A stretch of 64,000 nt of DNA, taken from assembly GCA_047495785.1 (NCBI GenBank), contig JBLDXI010000024.1:3348001-3412000 (forward strand), given 5' to 3'. The notes below the pieces were generated by a model that did no database searches, was not told where the DNA came from, and was given only the letters and a program-made list of their open reading frames with translations. Below are positions 13,676 to 41,500 of the stretch, piece after piece. Position 1 is the stretch's first letter, and the number at the start of each line of letters is the position of its first letter. The translations under genes were made by a program, and so were the position numbers. This stretch comes from Lepidodermella squamata (lineage: Eukaryota > Animalia > Gastrotricha).

Positions 13676-13744
13676 GCGGCTCGTCGGTGTCACTTTGAAT
13701 GTGACTCCAGGGAGCACCACGAGGAGGTCAGCCGCAAGTTCCCC
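13676..13744 (-). ncRNA. HDV-like self-cleaving ribozyme fold downstream of the copy B stop codon
   Basis: The minus strand reads GGGGAAC-UU-GCGGCUG-ACC-UCCUCGU-GGU-GCUCCCU-GG-A-GUCAC-AUUCAAA-GUGAC-A-CCGA-C-G-AGCCGC. This gives P1 (G1.U wobble, one A-C mismatch), P2, P3, L3 UCCUCG, P1.1 CC/GG, a P4 hairpin and J4/2 CNRA. Confidence 0.85.
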
Positions 13745-36166: not shown

Positions 36167-37067
36167 ATGGCTCGTACCTTGGCCGCCGCTCCGAAGCGAG
36201 CTGGAAGCCGACGATCTCCGGTCAAGCCGCGAAAACACCGGGTTCAACGCAAAACCCGGATTTTCTTCACCAATGATGATAAGCAACGTTTATGTACTAT
36301 CGTAAAACAGCACATTCCGGTCATCGAAGACAAGTCGCTAACGACCGACTCGACGGGTGCGAAAAGTAATTCCTGGGCGGCGATTGCTCGAGAGTACGCA
36401 AAGAAGCGCGGCGTCGGAAAACGCCCCGCTCATACGCTCAGCGATCTCAAGAATCTATGGACCCGCATTGTCTACAAGCTGAAAGAAAAGATCCGTCAAG
36501 AAGCGACAAAGCCGGCCCCTGGTGGTGGCGAAGATAGCAATTTCGTTTTCTATGAACTCTACGAATTAACGATTCTAAATCAGATCAAGCGTGTCACGCC
36601 GACTGCCCTGCGCGGAATCCGGGGTAACTTTTGACTATCCCATGTCAATTTCTTTCAGAGAAAATGTTTAGTATCCGTGCAAAGGTATCCGTGATTCTGA
36701 CATGGCCAGTCACGGCGATTTCAGCGATGAAGACGACGTTATCGACGACGCCGAAGAAGAACAAGAAGAAGATGACGGCGACGATGATGATATCGACTCT
36801 TCGGAAGCTGAAGAAAACCCGTTCGGAGAAAATCACTCTGACCACGCAGACGGACCAGGAACAAGCGGTAACGGAGCTGACGCTGGTCATCAAACTGTTG
36901 CCCAAAAGAAGGCGAAGCTTCAAAGCCTGGCTATTGAGAAAGCCGAACTCGAGAACGAGCTGATTCGCGTTCAAATCGAGGAGTTGCGCCGCAAGACCGC
37001 GAGCAACAGCGCCTCACAAAGCCAGAATTCATTGGACCTGCCCGAAATCGCCATCAAGTACGATTGA
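36167..37067 (+). CDS. Myb/SANT-like DNA-binding protein of a PIF/Harbinger transposon (two exons)
   Basis: Trihelix pattern FTNDDKQRLCTIVKQH..VIEDK...KSNSWAAIAREY...TLSDLKNLWTRI, a probable intron at ~36624-36670/36684, then an acidic tract and coiled coil. Convergent with the HARBI1-like remnant. Confidence 0.75.
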
Positions 37068-37289
37068 GCCGGTTCTGGTCACAACACGTCGAGAACTTGA
37101 AAAGAAAAGACTGAAAACTTTCAATTTTCTACTTTTCTACTTTTCTAACTTTTCTAACTCTAGTGCATTCGTACCCAAGTCCACTATTAGCCATCAGCCG
37201 CGTGATAACTTTTTATTCGAAATAAAACTGTTAAGGTTGCATCATCAGAGATATGTACATGTTCGAGGTTCGAGTTGAGTCAGGAATTT

Positions 37290-37735
37290 TTAGGAAAAAT
37301 ACTGATTGATGATTTTGCGGCGAATTCGCTCGCCCTGATTGACAGAGTGATATTCGTCTTCGTCGCGAGGCTCCGGGGCAACAACTTCATCGTCAAGTTC
37401 ATCTCCGACTTCCGAAAACGGGTTCACGAAGGTTAAGGGCGATATTGTGTAAAACCGCACAGGCAAGAATTACATTAGCGCGTCGATTTGCTTGAAATCT
37501 CAAACGATTATCAACGTTTTGCAAACATCGAAATCGGCTTTTCAAAAGGCCGAAAAGTCGTTCAATGATAGATCGGCGACGATTAAGGGAACGGTTGTAG
37601 GCAATGCGGCGTCAGTTTGAGGGTTTCTTAGCGGAGTTAAGAGTTCTGGAGCCAATTGGTAACCCTTGTCTCCAATAAGCCGGTAATTTTCATAAAGAGC
37701 CGTATCTTGCATTTTCGCTCTGACTCGAGATCATG
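37290..37735 (-). pseudogene. Harbinger/HARBI1-like DDE nuclease, C-terminal remnant
   Basis: Translates YRLIGDKGYQLAPELLTPLRNP / YNRSLNRRRSIIERLFGLLKSRFRCL...ILACAVLHNIA...YFS*. These are hallmark HARBI1 motifs; the remnant is frameshifted and 5'-truncated. Confidence 0.85.
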
Positions 37736-37854
37736 ACTTTAGTTTTCAGGATTTTTCAGAATTTTCAGAGCTTTTGATAAAAAACAATTTCCAGATTTTT
37801 CGAATTACACAAAAACAAATTAATATATAAAAATGATTTGCGAGTTGGAGCAAC

Positions 37855-38255
37855 CTACTTATAGCAGCCTTCGGTTTGAGAAGAGTGAATTGCCGTCGCA
37901 ATAGGCAGGGCCCCGAGTGAAGACCCGCTAACAAGTAAGGTCAAGGGTTTATTGAGTAGTTCACAGCTCGCTGTTGAATCAACAAATGAAGTATCCTAAG
38001 CCTCCTCCACATTTTTCAGGACCCTTTTCATAAGTCCTGTTTGGATAATCAGGCACCAGATATCCTCTTCAGAAGAAGTGCGACTTTTAGAAAAATCAGC
38101 AATATCAGGATGTTGATCGGCGAATTCCTGCAATTTTTCCAACATTGATTCGCCGCCCTGACCGCCATGTTCAGCGACTTGAATGCTCGTAGCCAAATGA
38201 TGCCAGTCTGTTATGGTCGGACAAATCTTTTGGCCGACCAATAAGGTGAGTGCGC
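37855..38255 (-). pseudogene. MULE-type transposase remnant (start of the DDE domain)
   Basis: Translates WCLIIQTGLMKRVLKNVEEA*DTSFVDSTASCELLNKPLTLLVSGSSLGALPIATAIHSSQTEGCYK*. FVDST is the first catalytic-Asp motif of MULE transposases, and there are in-frame stops. Confidence 0.7.
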
Positions 38256-38378
38256 TACATTTTTCATGGTAAACGGCCAATTTCGAGGTTTTTAGCAGCC
38301 GGAGGAAACCACCGCTGGATCCGTAAATGTGCGAAATAAATCTAGCAAACAATACTTTTTTTGTTAGCGCACAAAAAT

Positions 38379-38448
38379 GCGGCTCATCGGTATCACTTTG
38401 AATGTGATTCCAGGGAGCACCACGAGGAGGTTAGCCGCTAAGCTCCCC
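38379..38448 (-). ncRNA. HDV-like self-cleaving ribozyme fold downstream of the copy C stop codon
   Basis: The minus strand reads GGGGAGC-UUA-GCGGCUA-ACC-UCCUCGU-GGU-GCUCCCU-GG-A-AUCAC-AUUCAAA-GUGAU-A-CCGA-U-G-AGCCGC. P1 is a fully paired 7 bp with G1.U, the nested double pseudoknot is complete, and P2 and P4 covary with copy B. Confidence 0.9.
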
Positions 38449-38511
38449 ATAACAAAAATGAAGCGCAAATTATTTTTGAAGCTACCGCAGAATTAATCCA
38501 GTGGTGCATTT

Positions 38512-41500
38512 TTACAACTTGATCGAAACGGCTGCGGTTATCGCGGGAAAACTTACAGTCAAGAAAATCACCCGTTAAACTTACAAGTACATTTCGACGG
38601 TAACCATGACTTGGTCGAGCCAGTGTAATTCAGCACTCCCCATGTTTTGTTAGCTTTCGAATTTCAAGCAATATTTAACTGTAGAAAAACAAAGAAAAAC
38701 TTACCAACACATGCAATCACAACCTGGCTGTCCCATGATAACGGGTCCAGAGTGTCGATGTCATAACATTCGTAGGTAAAATTCGTAGCAAACTCATAGA
38801 TCGCATTAGCCGCAGCCGGGACTACCCCAGATATTTTTACATTGGGATAAATCGGCGGGCTGTCACAATTCAAGGGAATGCAAACACCAGGTGTTTTCGG
38901 CTCCCACTGCTGGCTATCACCGCAGTAAATAGTTTTCGATTTAACATAACTATCACCGTCTTTGAAAGTGTAGCCGCGGACACAAGTGTACTCCCAGGTT
39001 GTATGTGCCCTGTTCTGAACATCGTAAGGCAGCGGATCGGGAATGGTAAAGTTATTCCATGAATAATCCACAACAGGAGGCATAGGACATCGCGTGGATT
39101 TGCAGATGATTTCTTCGCCGGTCCAGTTACCGTAAGGCTTAGCGCAGATCCGAACAGGCAAGCCGGTTGAGACCATCATGAAGTCATCGGCGCACTGATA
39201 GAAGAGAGTCATGGTCCCAGCCGAAACTTCGACATTTGGCAGCCGAACAGCGCTGCTGTTTGATAAATCGGGATACATGCCGCATAACGTCCGGCAGTCT
39301 AGCCAATCACCCACCCATCTTTGCGTGCCGCTGTCGCATGTCAGAACAGTTGTATCACCCTGCCACTTCGAGTTAGTGAAACCAGGAAAACATGTGTAAT
39401 TCACTGAGATTTTCGAGCTGAAATCAGAAGTGATTATCTCCTGCGAAGTCCCAGTCATAGTCGGTGGAGGCCCACATTGGCCCGGGAAATATCCGCAGTC
39501 ATCCATCCTGAAGTACGTATCAGTTCCTGTTTCGGGGTCCCCCTCGCCCGGGACGCATGTGTCATTCCGTATCTTGCAGTCCCCTTGTGTAGAGCTTTTC
39601 AGGGTGAAAACTGCAGTTTTACATATCCAGCTACCATACGCCGTGCAATAACTAGTACATTCGGTTGCAGTAACTTGCTTGGTCAGCGAGTAAGAAATGC
39701 CCTCGTCGCAATTGAAATTTGGAATTTTTACGTATCTCCCAGGTTTGGTGGATCGCCGGACTTTCATGGATGTCCATGATAAATTCGGATCATAGCCGTT
39801 TTTGAATGTGTACCAATACATTTGGGCACTCTCAGGGGATTGCTTGCCATAAATAGCGTTAAGATTGGATGTCTCGGCAGTTGAACTAGACGAGACGCAC
39901 GGGGTAGGTTGGTCGAACCACCAGCCGCCACACAGGTCGAAAATGAAGAAATTTCCATTCAGCGCTTTAAGGGAGTCACCGGCGGTGGAACAAGCCTGGT
40001 AGTTCGCTATGTTCAGTGTGTAGGCATCACTCTCGGTGTAGAAAAGCTTATAATAAGCAAATGCGTATTCATTTCCGGATCGCATTTCAACCAGCAGCTC
40101 GAAATTAGCAGCGGCCGTCAGGCCTTTGATAAGTCTGTTGCCCATCCAGTAATTGCTAGAAATCGAACCAATCTGATAATCGTAACCAGCCAAGTCAAGC
40201 ATGAACGTTGTCGTGTCATCAACACGCCGTTGGATTTGGGTCCATCCTCCACCGAAAGTCTCCATATCGCAAAACGCGTTAAAGGTAATCGGCGACCCAG
40301 CTCCATTTTCTGCCACCATGTCGCTGAACGCTTGCGATAGATAGCGGCTAGTTATCGGCAGATTAGCTTGCTTCCAAGTGCAGTCATTTGGCACAGAGTA
40401 AGCTTCAAATTCGAGAATGAATTAACTCAAGTTAATTGATGATTTATAGTTGAAAATCTTACGTTTGCAAACAAGGTCACTTCCGGAATAGACTCCACTG
40501 CGATCGGTCAGCATTAATCTGTTGCGATCCCCGGAAATTTGTCTAAATGCATGATTGCACTTGTGGTTGTAAGTTGCCTTCCTCCAGTGGCAAACTTGAG
40601 ATGTCGAAGCTTTAGGGCGATACAGAGAATCGGCAACTTTCGGTTTTATCGCCATTTGTGTAGCTAAACATGACTTGTCCCAGCCCGTTAATGGCGACCA
40701 GTTAAGACCATAACCCCAATTCGTACTGCCCCAATTTGCTGAATTGAGGTTAGCCCACATCTGGCAACCAGGGTTGTTATCAGGCCACGCCCAGCTACCA
40801 TCAATTGGAGGGTACCACCAAGCACCAAAATATTTAGTGTCATGCCAGTTCATGCAAGCCTTCATGGACCCTCTATCAGGTGTTTGGAAAGGTTGGTCGT
40901 TGTGATGCCACACATCGAATGCATCGCCTGCATATAGGTTACTCGGCGTTGATGAGTCATAATTCTTCAGCTTGATTCGATAATCTTGCTTTTCGGAGTA
41001 TATTTTAACGTCATCATAATAGGCGTATTTCCATTGTGAGTCGATGGGACTTTTGCAACCCACAAGGAGGGCGTACGGCGCTGACATTGTCAAACGGCTG
41101 ACTACGTCAAGCCCAAGCCAATAATCTCCATTCAACCCCTTTGTTGGGCTCGAGAAACCTCTTTTATAGTCGTCCCAGCCTCGCCAGAAGTCTGTCTCGC
41201 CATCAGTTCGTCTCTGAATGACGGTCCAACCTGTGCCTCGATTGGGATAATCTGTCGAATTATAGTTGGTTGAGTAATCGCAGTACGCTTGGAATTCAGT
41301 GCCGTCAGATAGCGTCAAAGTACTGACACCAGAGTTGCTGGCAGCCGTAAGGCAGTCTCTATTCCTCATTCGACGCTTGATAGCGATTTGGGTTGCTGCC
41401 ATGGAGACTTTATCCTTTCCTAGAGTATACCAGTTTACTCCAACGTAACTACGAGGATCGCCGAAAAAGCCGTTCAAGTCAGCTCTCGTCTGGGAGCAAT

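What the first reader, a model, noticed from the sequence alone, without database searches (positions are those of the whole stretch)
38379..38448. HDV-like self-cleaving ribozyme just downstream of the stop codon of a giant lectin gene (copy C)
Seen in sequence: 63 nt after the predicted TAA, on the sense strand, is a 70-nt RNA with every element of the HDV/CPEB3 nested double pseudoknot. P1 is GGGGAGC/GCUCCCU with the G1.U wobble, P2 is GCGGCU-A/U-(G bulge)-AGCCGC, P3 is ACC/GGU, L3 is UCCUCGU, P1.1 is CC/GG, P4 is AUCAC/GUGAU, and J4/2 CCGA carries the catalytic-position C. Established: HDV-like ribozymes cut 5' of G1, and in animals they are mostly known from non-LTR retrotransposon 5' ends or introns (CPEB3). 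Here I see no retrotransposon ORF behind it, there is no canonical AAUAAA between the stop and G1 (only AAUAAU ~20 nt upstream of the cut), and paralogue similarity ends just past the ribozyme. Inference: the gene may use the ribozyme for 3'-end formation, for termination that prevents read-through into the next tandem copy, or for mRNA destabilisation.
Basis: partly seen in the sequence, partly recalled or inferred. Interest (0 to 1): 0.93.

Follow-up and report, generated by a model that had tools for sequence, protein, structure and literature searches.

The report
Self-cutting RNA ending lectin genes
A well-conserved, hepatitis-delta-type self-cutting RNA sits about 60-130 bases after the stop codon of each of 17 giant lectin-type genes in this small animal, and of their relatives in another species; that points to a use by the host gene at its 3' end, unlike the usual jumping-element setting, though no RNA data yet show what it does.

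Summary
Window 38379-38448 (minus strand, G1 = 38448) has every sequence and pairing feature of an HDV-like nested double-pseudoknot ribozyme. It starts 63 nt after the inferred TAA of a Fibrinogen_C/PAN/Sushi giant gene.

It belongs to a family. I found 17 intact copies on 7 contigs of this genome, and at least 3 distinct ones in another species seen in environmental metagenome contigs. Each lies just after a gene that ends in the same PAN-Sushi module.

Across 19 sequences:
- 98% of cells pair and 15 of 24 pairs show compensatory changes (0 of 500 shuffles reach this).
- G1.U, L3 UCCNCGY, P1.1 and the J4/2 cytosine are invariant.

Upstream gene sequence is homologous between copies. Downstream sequence is not, and it holds no retrotransposon ORF. 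That is the reverse of the retroelement signature. Four copies outside the gene context have decayed.

No AAUAAA or AUUAAA lies between stop and cut site in any of the 17. No RNA data were available, so the role (3'-end formation, termination or destabilisation) stays inferred.

The scan noted the same arrangement earlier on other DNA of this genome (s1-374168, s1-422027, s1-407480, s1-379672).

Verdict: a real ribozyme family in a new, host-gene-linked setting; its function is untested.

The parts
38379..38448 (-). HDV-like self-cleaving ribozyme, copy C (70 nt). The predicted cut is between 38449 and 38448, 5' of G1.
   Evidence: Sequence. RF00094 full-length sub-threshold match. Own covariance models score it 82-95 bits. 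Covariation. Strict descriptor versus shuffles.
38442..38448 (-). P1 5' strand (G1-C7). It pairs with 38412-38418 and has G1.U37 at the cleavage site.
   Evidence: G.U in 19/19 sequences. Two P1 pairs show compensatory G-C to A-U changes across the family.
38432..38438 (-). P2 5' strand. It pairs with 38379-38386, with G at 38385 bulged. This pairing forms the outer pseudoknot.
   Evidence: 6 of 6 counted P2 pairs covary, although P2 was not part of the search model.
38419..38431 (-). P3 (ACC/GGU) closing the 7-nt L3 UCCUCGU. The L3 CC (38426-38427) pairs with GG (38410-38411) to form P1.1.
   Evidence: The string ACCUCCUCGUGGU is identical to the drz-agam-1 consensus core. L3 is UCCNCGY and P1.1 is CC/GG in 19/19.
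38392..38408 (-). P4 hairpin (AUCAC / GUGAU, 7-nt loop).
   Evidence: All 6 P4 pairs covary. Loop length and sequence vary freely.
38387..38391 (-). J4/2 (ACCGA). The C at 38390 is at the position of the HDV catalytic C75.
   Evidence: This C is invariant in all 19 intact copies and lost in the decayed relics.
38449..38511 (-). 63-nt 3' UTR between the stop and the cut site. Conserved blocks: GCACCACUGG (38498-38507), GCGGUAGCUU (38479-38488) and the U-rich UUGCGCUUC...UUUUUGUUAU (38449-38468). AAUAAU lies at 38469-38474.
   Evidence: Alignments. No AAUAAA or AUUAAA in 0/17 members. No consensus secondary structure of its own. The -1 nucleotide is a pyrimidine in 19/19.
38512..38531 (-). Inferred last mini-exon (..SVSIKL) with TAA at 38512-38514.
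   Evidence: Inferred from GT-AG sites conserved in copy B and from frame continuity. No RNA evidence.
38585..38653 (-). Inferred penultimate exon encoding the C-terminal half of the last Sushi domain.
   Evidence: Frame continuity and the W...P..C pattern, conserved in copy B. Sushi hits in the flanking ORFs.
38705..40394 (-). Large exon (576-codon open frame) with the end of a Fibrinogen_C domain, a PAN-like module and Sushi. It is under strong purifying selection.
   Evidence: Pfam. dN/dS 0.049 and dS 0.29 against copy B.
13676..13744 (-). Second ribozyme in the window (copy B, 69 nt). Against copy C it has compensatory A-U to G-C changes in P2 and P4, one A.C mismatch in P1 and a 1-nt shorter J1/2.

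Best explanation
This is one member of a conserved family of genuine HDV-like (nested double-pseudoknot) self-cleaving ribozymes. The family belongs to the 3' end of a host gene family: giant secreted Fibrinogen/PAN/Sushi multi-lectin genes.

Proposed mechanism. As RNA polymerase II passes the stop codon it transcribes a short, unstructured, U-rich 3' UTR and then the 70-nt ribozyme. The ribozyme folds and cuts 5' of G1 (between 38449 and 38448). That would leave the lectin mRNA body with a 2',3'-cyclic phosphate on a U-rich tail, and a 5'-OH on whatever is transcribed further.

My preferred reading is that this cut is the primary 3' cut of these transcripts, in place of cleavage at a canonical poly(A) signal. 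It would define the mRNA 3' end and uncouple it from downstream transcription.

Shown here: the fold, its selection, and its linkage to the gene end in two species.
Inferred: catalysis, the timing of the cut, and the fate of the cut mRNA.

Odds: real ribozyme fold under selection, about 0.9. A cis-acting part of the host gene's 3' end rather than a mobile-element part, about 0.8. The ribozyme makes the primary 3' cut, about 0.45.
For: Fold:
- Every HDV-like feature is present.
- Across 17 genomic plus 2 metagenomic copies, 98.0% of cells pair and 15 of 24 pairs have changes on both sides. 0 of 500 shuffles reach this, and slid controls pair at 29-53% (the 17 alone).
- P2 was not in the search model and covaries at 6 of 6 pairs.
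- G1.U, L3 UCCNCGY, P1.1, the J4/2 C and a pyrimidine at -1 are invariant.
- The strict descriptor gives 2 hits against 4 in 1000 shuffles.

Host linkage:
- All 17 intact copies follow a PAN-Sushi gene end.
- About 25 paralogues in which the PAN-like module is followed by EGF instead have no ribozyme.
- Ribozyme similarity tracks upstream gene similarity (Spearman 0.66).
- Upstream flanks are homologous up to 95%. Downstream flanks are unalignable except in one recent pair.
- There are no RT/EN domains downstream.
- Four copies outside this context have lost L3 bases, G4 and the J4/2 C.
- Homologous genes on metagenome contigs of another species carry the ribozyme at the same place.
- The genes are functional: dN/dS is 0.049.

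Primary-cut reading:
- 0 of 17 have AAUAAA or AUUAAA between stop and G1. Only 7 of 17 have one within 200 nt after the ribozyme.
- By contrast, 10 of 14 actin genes of this genome show one within 400 nt of the stop.
- The UTR sequence motifs directly upstream of the cut are conserved, also in the other species.
Against: - No RNA evidence of any kind. The two runs on offer are assembled contigs, one is DNA, and neither covers the ribozyme informatively.
- Self-cleavage is untested. No Rfam family reaches its gathering score (29-35 bits against 50).
- Ribozyme-ended, non-adenylated mRNAs are usually unstable or poorly exported in other eukaryotes (established knowledge from reporter work). The UTR shows no conserved stabilising structure.
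- In the metagenome relative an AAUAAA lies about 70 nt after the ribozyme, and 7 of 17 local copies have one within 200 nt. A poly(A) site downstream of the ribozyme, as in Clec2, is therefore quite possible.
- The absence of a hexamer in a 60-110-nt interval is what chance alone would give.
- The stop codon and last exons are inferred from splice motifs only.
- Covariation counts on paralogues are inflated by shared ancestry, and P1, P3 and P4 were fitted by the model.
Confidence: 0.6

Rival explanations
1. Expression damper or switch of the Clec2 type. The true poly(A) site lies downstream of the ribozyme. Self-cleavage removes the tail signal from part of the transcripts and so lowers, or conditionally tunes, the output of these lectin genes.
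For: - The ribozyme sits between the stop and the nearest canonical hexamers where these exist. Seven of 17 have AAUAAA or AUUAAA within 200 nt after it, and the metagenome relative has one about 70 nt after it.
- The precedent is a hammerhead ribozyme in the 3' UTR of mammalian Clec2 lectin genes that cuts between stop and poly(A) signal and lowers expression (PMC6765202, PMC2950038).
- Copy B tolerates a P1 mismatch, and so does one metagenome copy.
- The conserved upstream block GCACCAC is complementary to GUGGUGC in the P3/P1 3' strands and could act as an attenuator (my reading; no covariation to test it).
Against: - Ten of 17 have no canonical hexamer within 200 nt downstream, and nothing downstream is conserved, even between copies 89-95% identical upstream.
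- A fast constitutive ribozyme would waste most of a transcript of 17 kb or more from genes under strong purifying selection.
- There is no ligand-binding or switch element in the fold beyond the standard core.
Confidence: 0.25
2. Fail-safe terminator or insulator. The mRNA is polyadenylated at a non-canonical site in the U-rich stretch just upstream of G1, for example after the conserved UUCA. The ribozyme only cuts the leftover nascent RNA, which promotes termination and protects downstream genes.
For: - AAUAAU lies 21-26 nt before G1 in copies B and C, followed by a CA and a U/GU-rich tract that looks like a downstream element.
- Ten of 17 copies are in same-strand tandem arrays.
- In the metagenome relative the next same-strand ORF starts only about 220 nt after the ribozyme.
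Against: - The AAUAAU is not conserved in the other members.
- Seven of 17 copies are not in arrays.
- An HDV-type cut leaves a 5'-OH, a poor substrate for the 5'-3' 'torpedo' exonuclease unless a kinase acts first (established biochemistry, not tested here).
Confidence: 0.15
3. Relic of a retrotransposon 5' end that inserted once behind the ancestral gene and is merely carried along, or a fold kept for a non-catalytic role such as protein binding or localisation.
For: - HDV-like ribozymes in animals are mostly retrotransposon heads (PMC6765202).
- This genome has ribozyme-headed 28S elements according to earlier scan notes (not tested here).
- Four decayed copies share a downstream flank, which resembles the retroelement pattern.
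Against: - A neutral relic would not keep 98% pairing through compensatory changes, an invariant catalytic core and a -1 pyrimidine across paralogues below 50% protein identity and across species.
- The shared downstream flank of the decayed copies occurs at only those four places, and they also include about 25 nt upstream of G1. That fits DNA-level duplication.
- No RT/EN lies downstream.
- A non-catalytic role does not explain conservation of exactly the catalytic positions (G1.U, the J4/2 C).
Confidence: 0.07

Closest known systems
HDV-like self-cleaving ribozymes (HDV genomic and antigenomic, CPEB3, drz families; Webb et al. 2009 as cited in PMC6765202 and PMC2950038)
   Same: - Same nested double-pseudoknot order, P1-P2-P3-L3-P1.1-P4-J4/2.
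- 7-bp P1 starting with G1.U37.
- L3 UCCNCGY as in HDV.
- J4/2 reads C-U-A-A in most members, as I recall for HDV C75-A78 (from memory, not checked here).
- The P3-L3 string is identical to the drz-agam-1 consensus.
   Different: - Sequence outside the core is unrelated, and no Rfam model reaches its threshold.
- The position is new: directly after the stop codon of a host protein-coding gene family. It is not in a virus, an intron (CPEB3) or a retrotransposon 5' UTR.
Ribozymes at the 5' ends of non-LTR retrotransposons (R2, RTE, Baggins, L1Tc)
   Same: Same fold. The same expected co-transcriptional cut that separates upstream from downstream RNA.
   Different: The signature is reversed. Here upstream sequence is conserved and downstream sequence varies. 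Only 17 copies, no RT/EN ORF, and divergence in step with host genes.
Discontinuous hammerhead ribozyme in the 3' UTR of mammalian Clec2 (C-type lectin) genes (Martick et al. 2008, as described in PMC6765202 and PMC2950038)
   Same: A self-cleaving ribozyme kept in the 3' UTR, after the stop codon, across a family of lectin-type genes. A cis effect on the mRNA 3' end.
   Different: - Different ribozyme class (hammerhead, split by hundreds of nt) and different animals.
- A known poly(A) signal lies downstream and a reporter effect has been measured.
- Here the ribozyme is compact and contiguous, no conserved poly(A) signal is seen on either side, and no expression data exist.
Poly(A)-independent or cleavage-coupled 3' ends (histone stem-loop/U7, MALAT1 RNase P cut with triple helix, beta-globin CoTC element). 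These are analogies from general knowledge.
   Same: An RNA 3' end, or termination, set by a structured RNA element downstream of the functional RNA body.
   Different: Those use protein or RNP nucleases and have defined stabilising structures. Here the cut would be autocatalytic, and the UTR shows sequence motifs but no conserved helix.

Membership tests
HDV-like ribozyme class | Nested double pseudoknot with helices in the order P1, P2, P3, P1.1, P4 | tested here: met
   All five helices can be drawn on the sequence. 98.0% of 455 cells pair in 19 sequences and 15 of 24 pairs have compensatory changes. Slid controls pair at 29-53%.
HDV-like ribozyme class | Cleavage-site G1 forming a G.U wobble at the base of a 7-bp P1 | tested here: met
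   G.U in 19 of 19. P1 is 7 bp, with single mismatches only in copy B and one metagenome copy.
HDV-like ribozyme class | 3-bp P3 closed by a ~7-nt L3 (U..CG), two of whose bases form P1.1 with the two bases after P1 | tested here: met
   ACC/GGU or GCC/GGC (a compensatory change). L3 is UCCNCGY and P1.1 is CC/GG, invariant in 19 of 19.
HDV-like ribozyme class | Catalytic cytosine in J4/2 (C75 equivalent) | tested here: met
   The C at 38390 is invariant in all intact copies and lost in the decayed relics. Only its presence was tested, not its catalytic role.
HDV-like ribozyme class | Mg2+-dependent self-scission giving 2',3'-cyclic phosphate and 5'-OH ends | not testable with these tools
   Needs an in vitro cleavage assay. 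No raw RNA reads were on offer.
Rfam RF00094 (HDV ribozyme proper), RF00622 (CPEB3) and RF01787 (drz-agam-1) | Score at or above the family's gathering threshold | tested here: not met
   RF00094 scores 29 bits here and 35.3 bits at L022, against 50. drz-agam-1 gives a partial 15 bits against 37. There is no CPEB3 match. So this is a new family within the class, not a member of these curated families.
Retrotransposon 5'-end ribozyme (R2/RTE/L1Tc type) | Conserved downstream element with RT/EN ORF, variable upstream flanks, many dispersed copies | tested here: not met
   Downstream flanks are unalignable and upstream flanks homologous. No RT/EN in the 1.5 kb downstream of 10 copies, nor in window 34-38 kb. 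17 intact copies only.
Clec2-type 3'-UTR ribozyme | Ribozyme cut site between the stop codon and the functional poly(A) signal of a host mRNA | tested here: inconclusive
   The position after the stop is met (the stop is inferred). A downstream canonical hexamer is present in only 7 of 17 and in one metagenome relative. Poly(A) sites are unmapped.

The most novel reading that the evidence does not exclude
A family of animal protein-coding mRNAs gets its 3' end by autocatalytic RNA cleavage instead of the cleavage/polyadenylation machinery. The conserved U-rich and GCACCACUGG motifs left at the 2',3'-cyclic-phosphate end would stand in for a poly(A) tail in stability or translation. That would be a third route to metazoan mRNA 3' ends, beside polyadenylation and the histone stem-loop.
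Probability: 0.25. Interest if true: 0.92.

Novelty: new variant of a known kind. Interest (0 to 1): 0.75.

Why it matters
HDV-like ribozymes are widespread, but outside viruses and retrotransposons almost none has a demonstrated host function. CPEB3 is the main studied case.

Here a whole gene family, in at least two species, keeps an intact HDV-like ribozyme at a fixed place just after the stop codon. Compensatory evolution shows long-term selection on the fold. That gives about twenty natural replicates with which to ask what a self-cleaving RNA does for a host mRNA: 3'-end formation, termination or dosage control.

The decayed copies outside the gene context serve as internal negative controls.

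If the cut makes the mature 3' end, this would be a new mode of mRNA 3' processing in animals. If it is a damper, it would be an independent, convergent parallel to the Clec2 hammerhead in mammalian lectin genes.

Tried and rejected
- Rfam at gathering thresholds found nothing. Only sub-threshold RF00094 matches appeared.
- MFE folding of the 70 nt gives a non-native nested fold (z = -2.1). This is uninformative because pseudoknots are not modelled.
- RNA evidence failed. The look-up of sequencing runs offered only two runs held as assembled contigs. X2 is DNA (it has a 130-kb contig). X1 is a low-depth run of uncertain kind with no cover at 38373-38766. No transcript end, strand or splice could be read.
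- X1's higher depth at about 36994-38332 is explained by a dispersed repeat, not by a downstream RNA.
- The search for homologous proteins with the C-terminal exon was blank. The cause was its length window; the exhaustive search did find relatives.
- The metagenome-wide pattern scan for the core returned only generic HDV-like sequences scoring 21-36 bits with my model. They are not relatives.
- P0006 is not on record, and P0027 is a distant Sushi protein without a ribozyme.
- A stabilising stem-loop in the 3' UTR is not supported: RNAalifold finds no consensus pairs.
- RNAalifold proposed that the upstream GCGGU pairs with the P2 3' strand. The two copies with a different P2 do not maintain this, so I rejected it.
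- I first took an apparent covariation between an upstream ACGCCG and the ribozyme in L014 as evidence of pairing. It turned out to be the conserved coding end of the last mini-exon, so I rejected it.
- The retroelement reading was rejected on flank homology, ORF content and copy number.
- The loose HDV descriptor was not specific. Only the L3-constrained one was.
- Complex prediction, structure prediction and fold searches were not relevant and were not used.

Full report
**1. The observation**

On the minus strand G1 is at 38448 and the element ends at 38379.
- P1 is 7 bp with G1.U37.
- J1/2 is 3 nt.
- P2 is 7 bp with one bulged G.
- P3 is ACC/GGU, closing L3 UCCUCGU.
- P1.1 is CC/GG.
- P4 is a 5-bp hairpin.
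- J4/2 is ACCGA, with a C at 38390 in the catalytic position.

The inferred stop also holds. Two short introns of 51 and 53 nt have GT-AG ends that are conserved in copy B. They keep the reading frame through the second half of a Sushi domain and lead to TAA at 38512-38514, 63 nt before G1. These splice sites are inferred; no RNA supports them.

Rfam finds nothing at gathering thresholds. In E-value mode the HDV model RF00094 matches end to end at 29 bits (threshold 50). The drz-agam-1 model matches the P3-L3 core exactly.

A strict descriptor hits the window exactly twice, at this copy and at 13677-13744. It requires P1 with G.U, P3, L3 UYCNCGY, P1.1 and a 6-bp P2. It gave 4 hits in 1000 dinucleotide shuffles. 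A descriptor without the L3 constraint is not specific.

**2. A family, not a single motif**

Copy B (13676-13744) differs from copy C by five substitutions and one indel. Four of the substitutions are two compensatory A-U to G-C changes, one in P2 and one in P4. The fifth is an A.C mismatch in P1.

I built a covariance model from five BLAST-found copies. Searched over the whole 121-Mb genome, it returned 21 places on 8 contigs. Seventeen look intact and four are decayed. A second model built from the 17 found the same set. There is a wide score gap between them: 71.7-90 bits for intact copies against 37 or less for decayed ones. Only 150 first-look candidates are scored per search, so the count is a lower bound.

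On the 17:
- 98.3% of cells pair and 15 of 24 pairs have changes on both sides. No shuffle out of 500 reaches this, and slid controls pair at 31-52%.
- P2 and P1.1 were not in the search model, so they are not fitted. P2 covaries at 6 of 6 pairs.
- G1.U, L3 UCCNCGY, P1.1 CC/GG and the J4/2 C are invariant. The nucleotide before the cut is always a pyrimidine.

The sequences are paralogues, so the shuffle counts overstate independence. Even so, the number of distinct pair types per helix is large.

**3. What the ribozymes are attached to**

Every intact copy lies about 60-130 nt after a gene end built from the same PAN-like module, Sushi repeats and a tiny last exon (Pfam).

The window's genes are giant Fibrinogen_C-rich mosaics. 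The last 576-codon exon of copies B and C has dN/dS 0.049 at dS 0.29, so both genes are under strong purifying selection.

About 25 further paralogues of the PAN-like module have no ribozyme within 1.5 kb. In the two I examined, the module is followed by EGF instead of the terminal Sushi.

Ribozyme similarity rises with upstream gene similarity (Spearman 0.66 over 136 non-independent pairs). Model scores fall in the same order as protein identity. This points to vertical co-inheritance rather than repeated insertion.

**4. Not a retroelement head**

The upstream 1.5 kb is homologous among members, up to 95%. The downstream 1.5 kb is unalignable even for pairs 89-95% identical upstream, with one recent pair as the exception. 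This is the reverse of the pattern described for retrotransposon ribozymes, which have conserved downstream and variable upstream sequence (PMC6765202).

No RT or endonuclease domain is found in downstream ORFs of ten copies, nor in window 34-38 kb.

The sharp loss of homology probably reflects gene conversion. Conversion would homogenise the transcribed unit up to its last selected element, while intergenic DNA turns over. This is my inference.

In copy C a dispersed repeat starts only 46 nt after the ribozyme, at 38332. Its ends look like terminal inverted repeats.

The four decayed copies lie in unrelated contexts. They have lost L3 bases, G4 and the J4/2 C. They share a roughly 450-nt downstream flank found only at those four places. 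They act as a natural control: outside the lectin-gene end the fold is not maintained.

**5. Conservation in another species**

An exhaustive protein search with the C-terminal 300 residues found two exon ORFs, 50% and 44% identical, on environmental metagenome contigs.

Five contigs from three assemblies carry Fibrinogen_C and PAN/Sushi ORFs. Each has a model hit of 53-71 bits on the same strand, 370-435 nt after the ORF end. These hits represent three distinct ribozyme sequences.

The contigs have no near-identical DNA in this genome; the best match is 72% over 123 nt. They therefore come from another organism. Adding two of them leaves the covariation picture unchanged, at 98.0% paired.

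The UTR motifs recur there in variant form, as GCAUACCACCUG and UUGCUUUUUAU before G1.

**6. How it most likely works**

What is shown: a fold with all catalytic hallmarks, under selection, fixed to the gene's 3' end.

What follows from established HDV ribozyme chemistry: a cut 5' of G1 would leave a 2',3'-cyclic phosphate upstream and a 5'-OH downstream.

Evidence on the role is indirect:
- No member has AAUAAA or AUUAAA between stop and G1.
- Seven of 17 have one within 200 nt after the ribozyme.
- Actin genes of this genome mostly show canonical hexamers: 10 of 14 within 400 nt of the stop.
- The UTR is predicted to be unstructured but carries conserved sequence blocks and a U-rich end.

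I therefore favour the ribozyme as the primary 3' cut, at about 0.45. The main rivals are a Clec2-like damper upstream of a downstream poly(A) site (about 0.25) and a fail-safe terminator behind a non-canonical poly(A) site (about 0.15).

Against my preferred reading:
- Non-adenylated mRNAs are usually unstable.
- The metagenome relative has AAUAAA about 70 nt after the ribozyme.
- A missing hexamer in so short an interval is expected by chance.

No RNA data could be obtained.

**7. Comparison with what is known, and novelty**

By its features this is a member of the HDV-like class. It belongs to none of the curated Rfam families.

The closest functional precedent is the discontinuous hammerhead in the 3' UTRs of mammalian Clec2 lectin genes (PMC6765202, PMC2950038). 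That is a different ribozyme class.

In the literature I could search, HDV-like ribozymes are described in retrotransposons, in an intron (CPEB3), in viruses and in bacteria. None is described as a conserved terminal element of a host gene family. Two key papers, Webb et al. 2009 and Webb and Luptak 2011, are not held. An earlier isolated mention therefore cannot be excluded.

Earlier notes of this scan report the same arrangement at other places of this genome. I re-found and checked three of those places.

Noticed in passing
window ~36994-38332: A dispersed repeat begins 46 nt after the ribozyme, at 38332. Its terminal ~45-55 nt occurs at 35 or more places in the genome, often as inverted pairs 1.25-1.37 kb apart, like the ends of a small DNA transposon. 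It explains the high read depth and the loose ends at 38332. No matching inverted end was found inside the window copy.
   Followed up: partly
window 36167-36634 (+): A 155-aa ORF on the opposite strand with a Myb/SANT-like DNA-binding domain (PF13873, E = 7e-7). It is possibly transposon-derived.
   Followed up: no
window 38498-38507 and 38479-38488 (-); same blocks in L006-L013, L018, L021: The 3' UTR sequence blocks GCACCACUGG (right after the stop) and GCGGUAGCUU are conserved without predicted structure. GCACCAC is complementary to GUGGUGC in the ribozyme's P3/P1 3' strands, so it could be an attenuator. A variant, GCAUACCACCUG, occurs in the metagenome relative. No covariation is available to test pairing.
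   Followed up: partly
L019 (C24:3717768), L024/L025 (C54:2166771 and 2168721, an inverted pair), L026 (C54:2150960): Four decayed ribozyme copies. They include about 25 nt of the lectin UTR and share a ~450-nt downstream flank that occurs only at these places. They sit next to a weak RVT_1 ORF and homeobox ORFs. They look like DNA-level duplicates of one lectin-gene 3' end.
   Followed up: partly
L006/L008 versus L007/L009 versus window copies (L010/L011): The ribozymes at C24:4.55 Mb and 3.34 Mb are 83-88% like those of the diverged 3.43/3.46 Mb genes, but only 73-76% like the window copies. Yet their coding sequence is 81-89% like the window copies and about 65% like the 3.43/3.46 Mb genes. 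This suggests either gene conversion that stops short of the ribozyme or faster ribozyme change in the window copies.
   Followed up: no
L150/L151, L159/L160 (actin loci); L022/L023: Pairs of nearly identical loci, including their flanks, lie on different contigs. They may be uncollapsed haplotypes or homeologous copies. The 17 ribozyme loci may therefore be fewer independent loci.
   Followed up: no
L200:4581-4800 (also L197): In the metagenome relative, AAUAAA lies about 70 nt after the ribozyme. A 424-aa same-strand ORF with no clear family starts only about 220 nt after it. This is a very compact arrangement and could mean co-transcription.
   Followed up: partly
L012:1933-2132 (-): A 200-nt long hairpin lies 350-550 nt downstream of that copy's ribozyme. 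It gives a sub-threshold match to a plant miRNA precursor model (48 bits against 119). It is probably a small inverted-repeat element.
   Followed up: no
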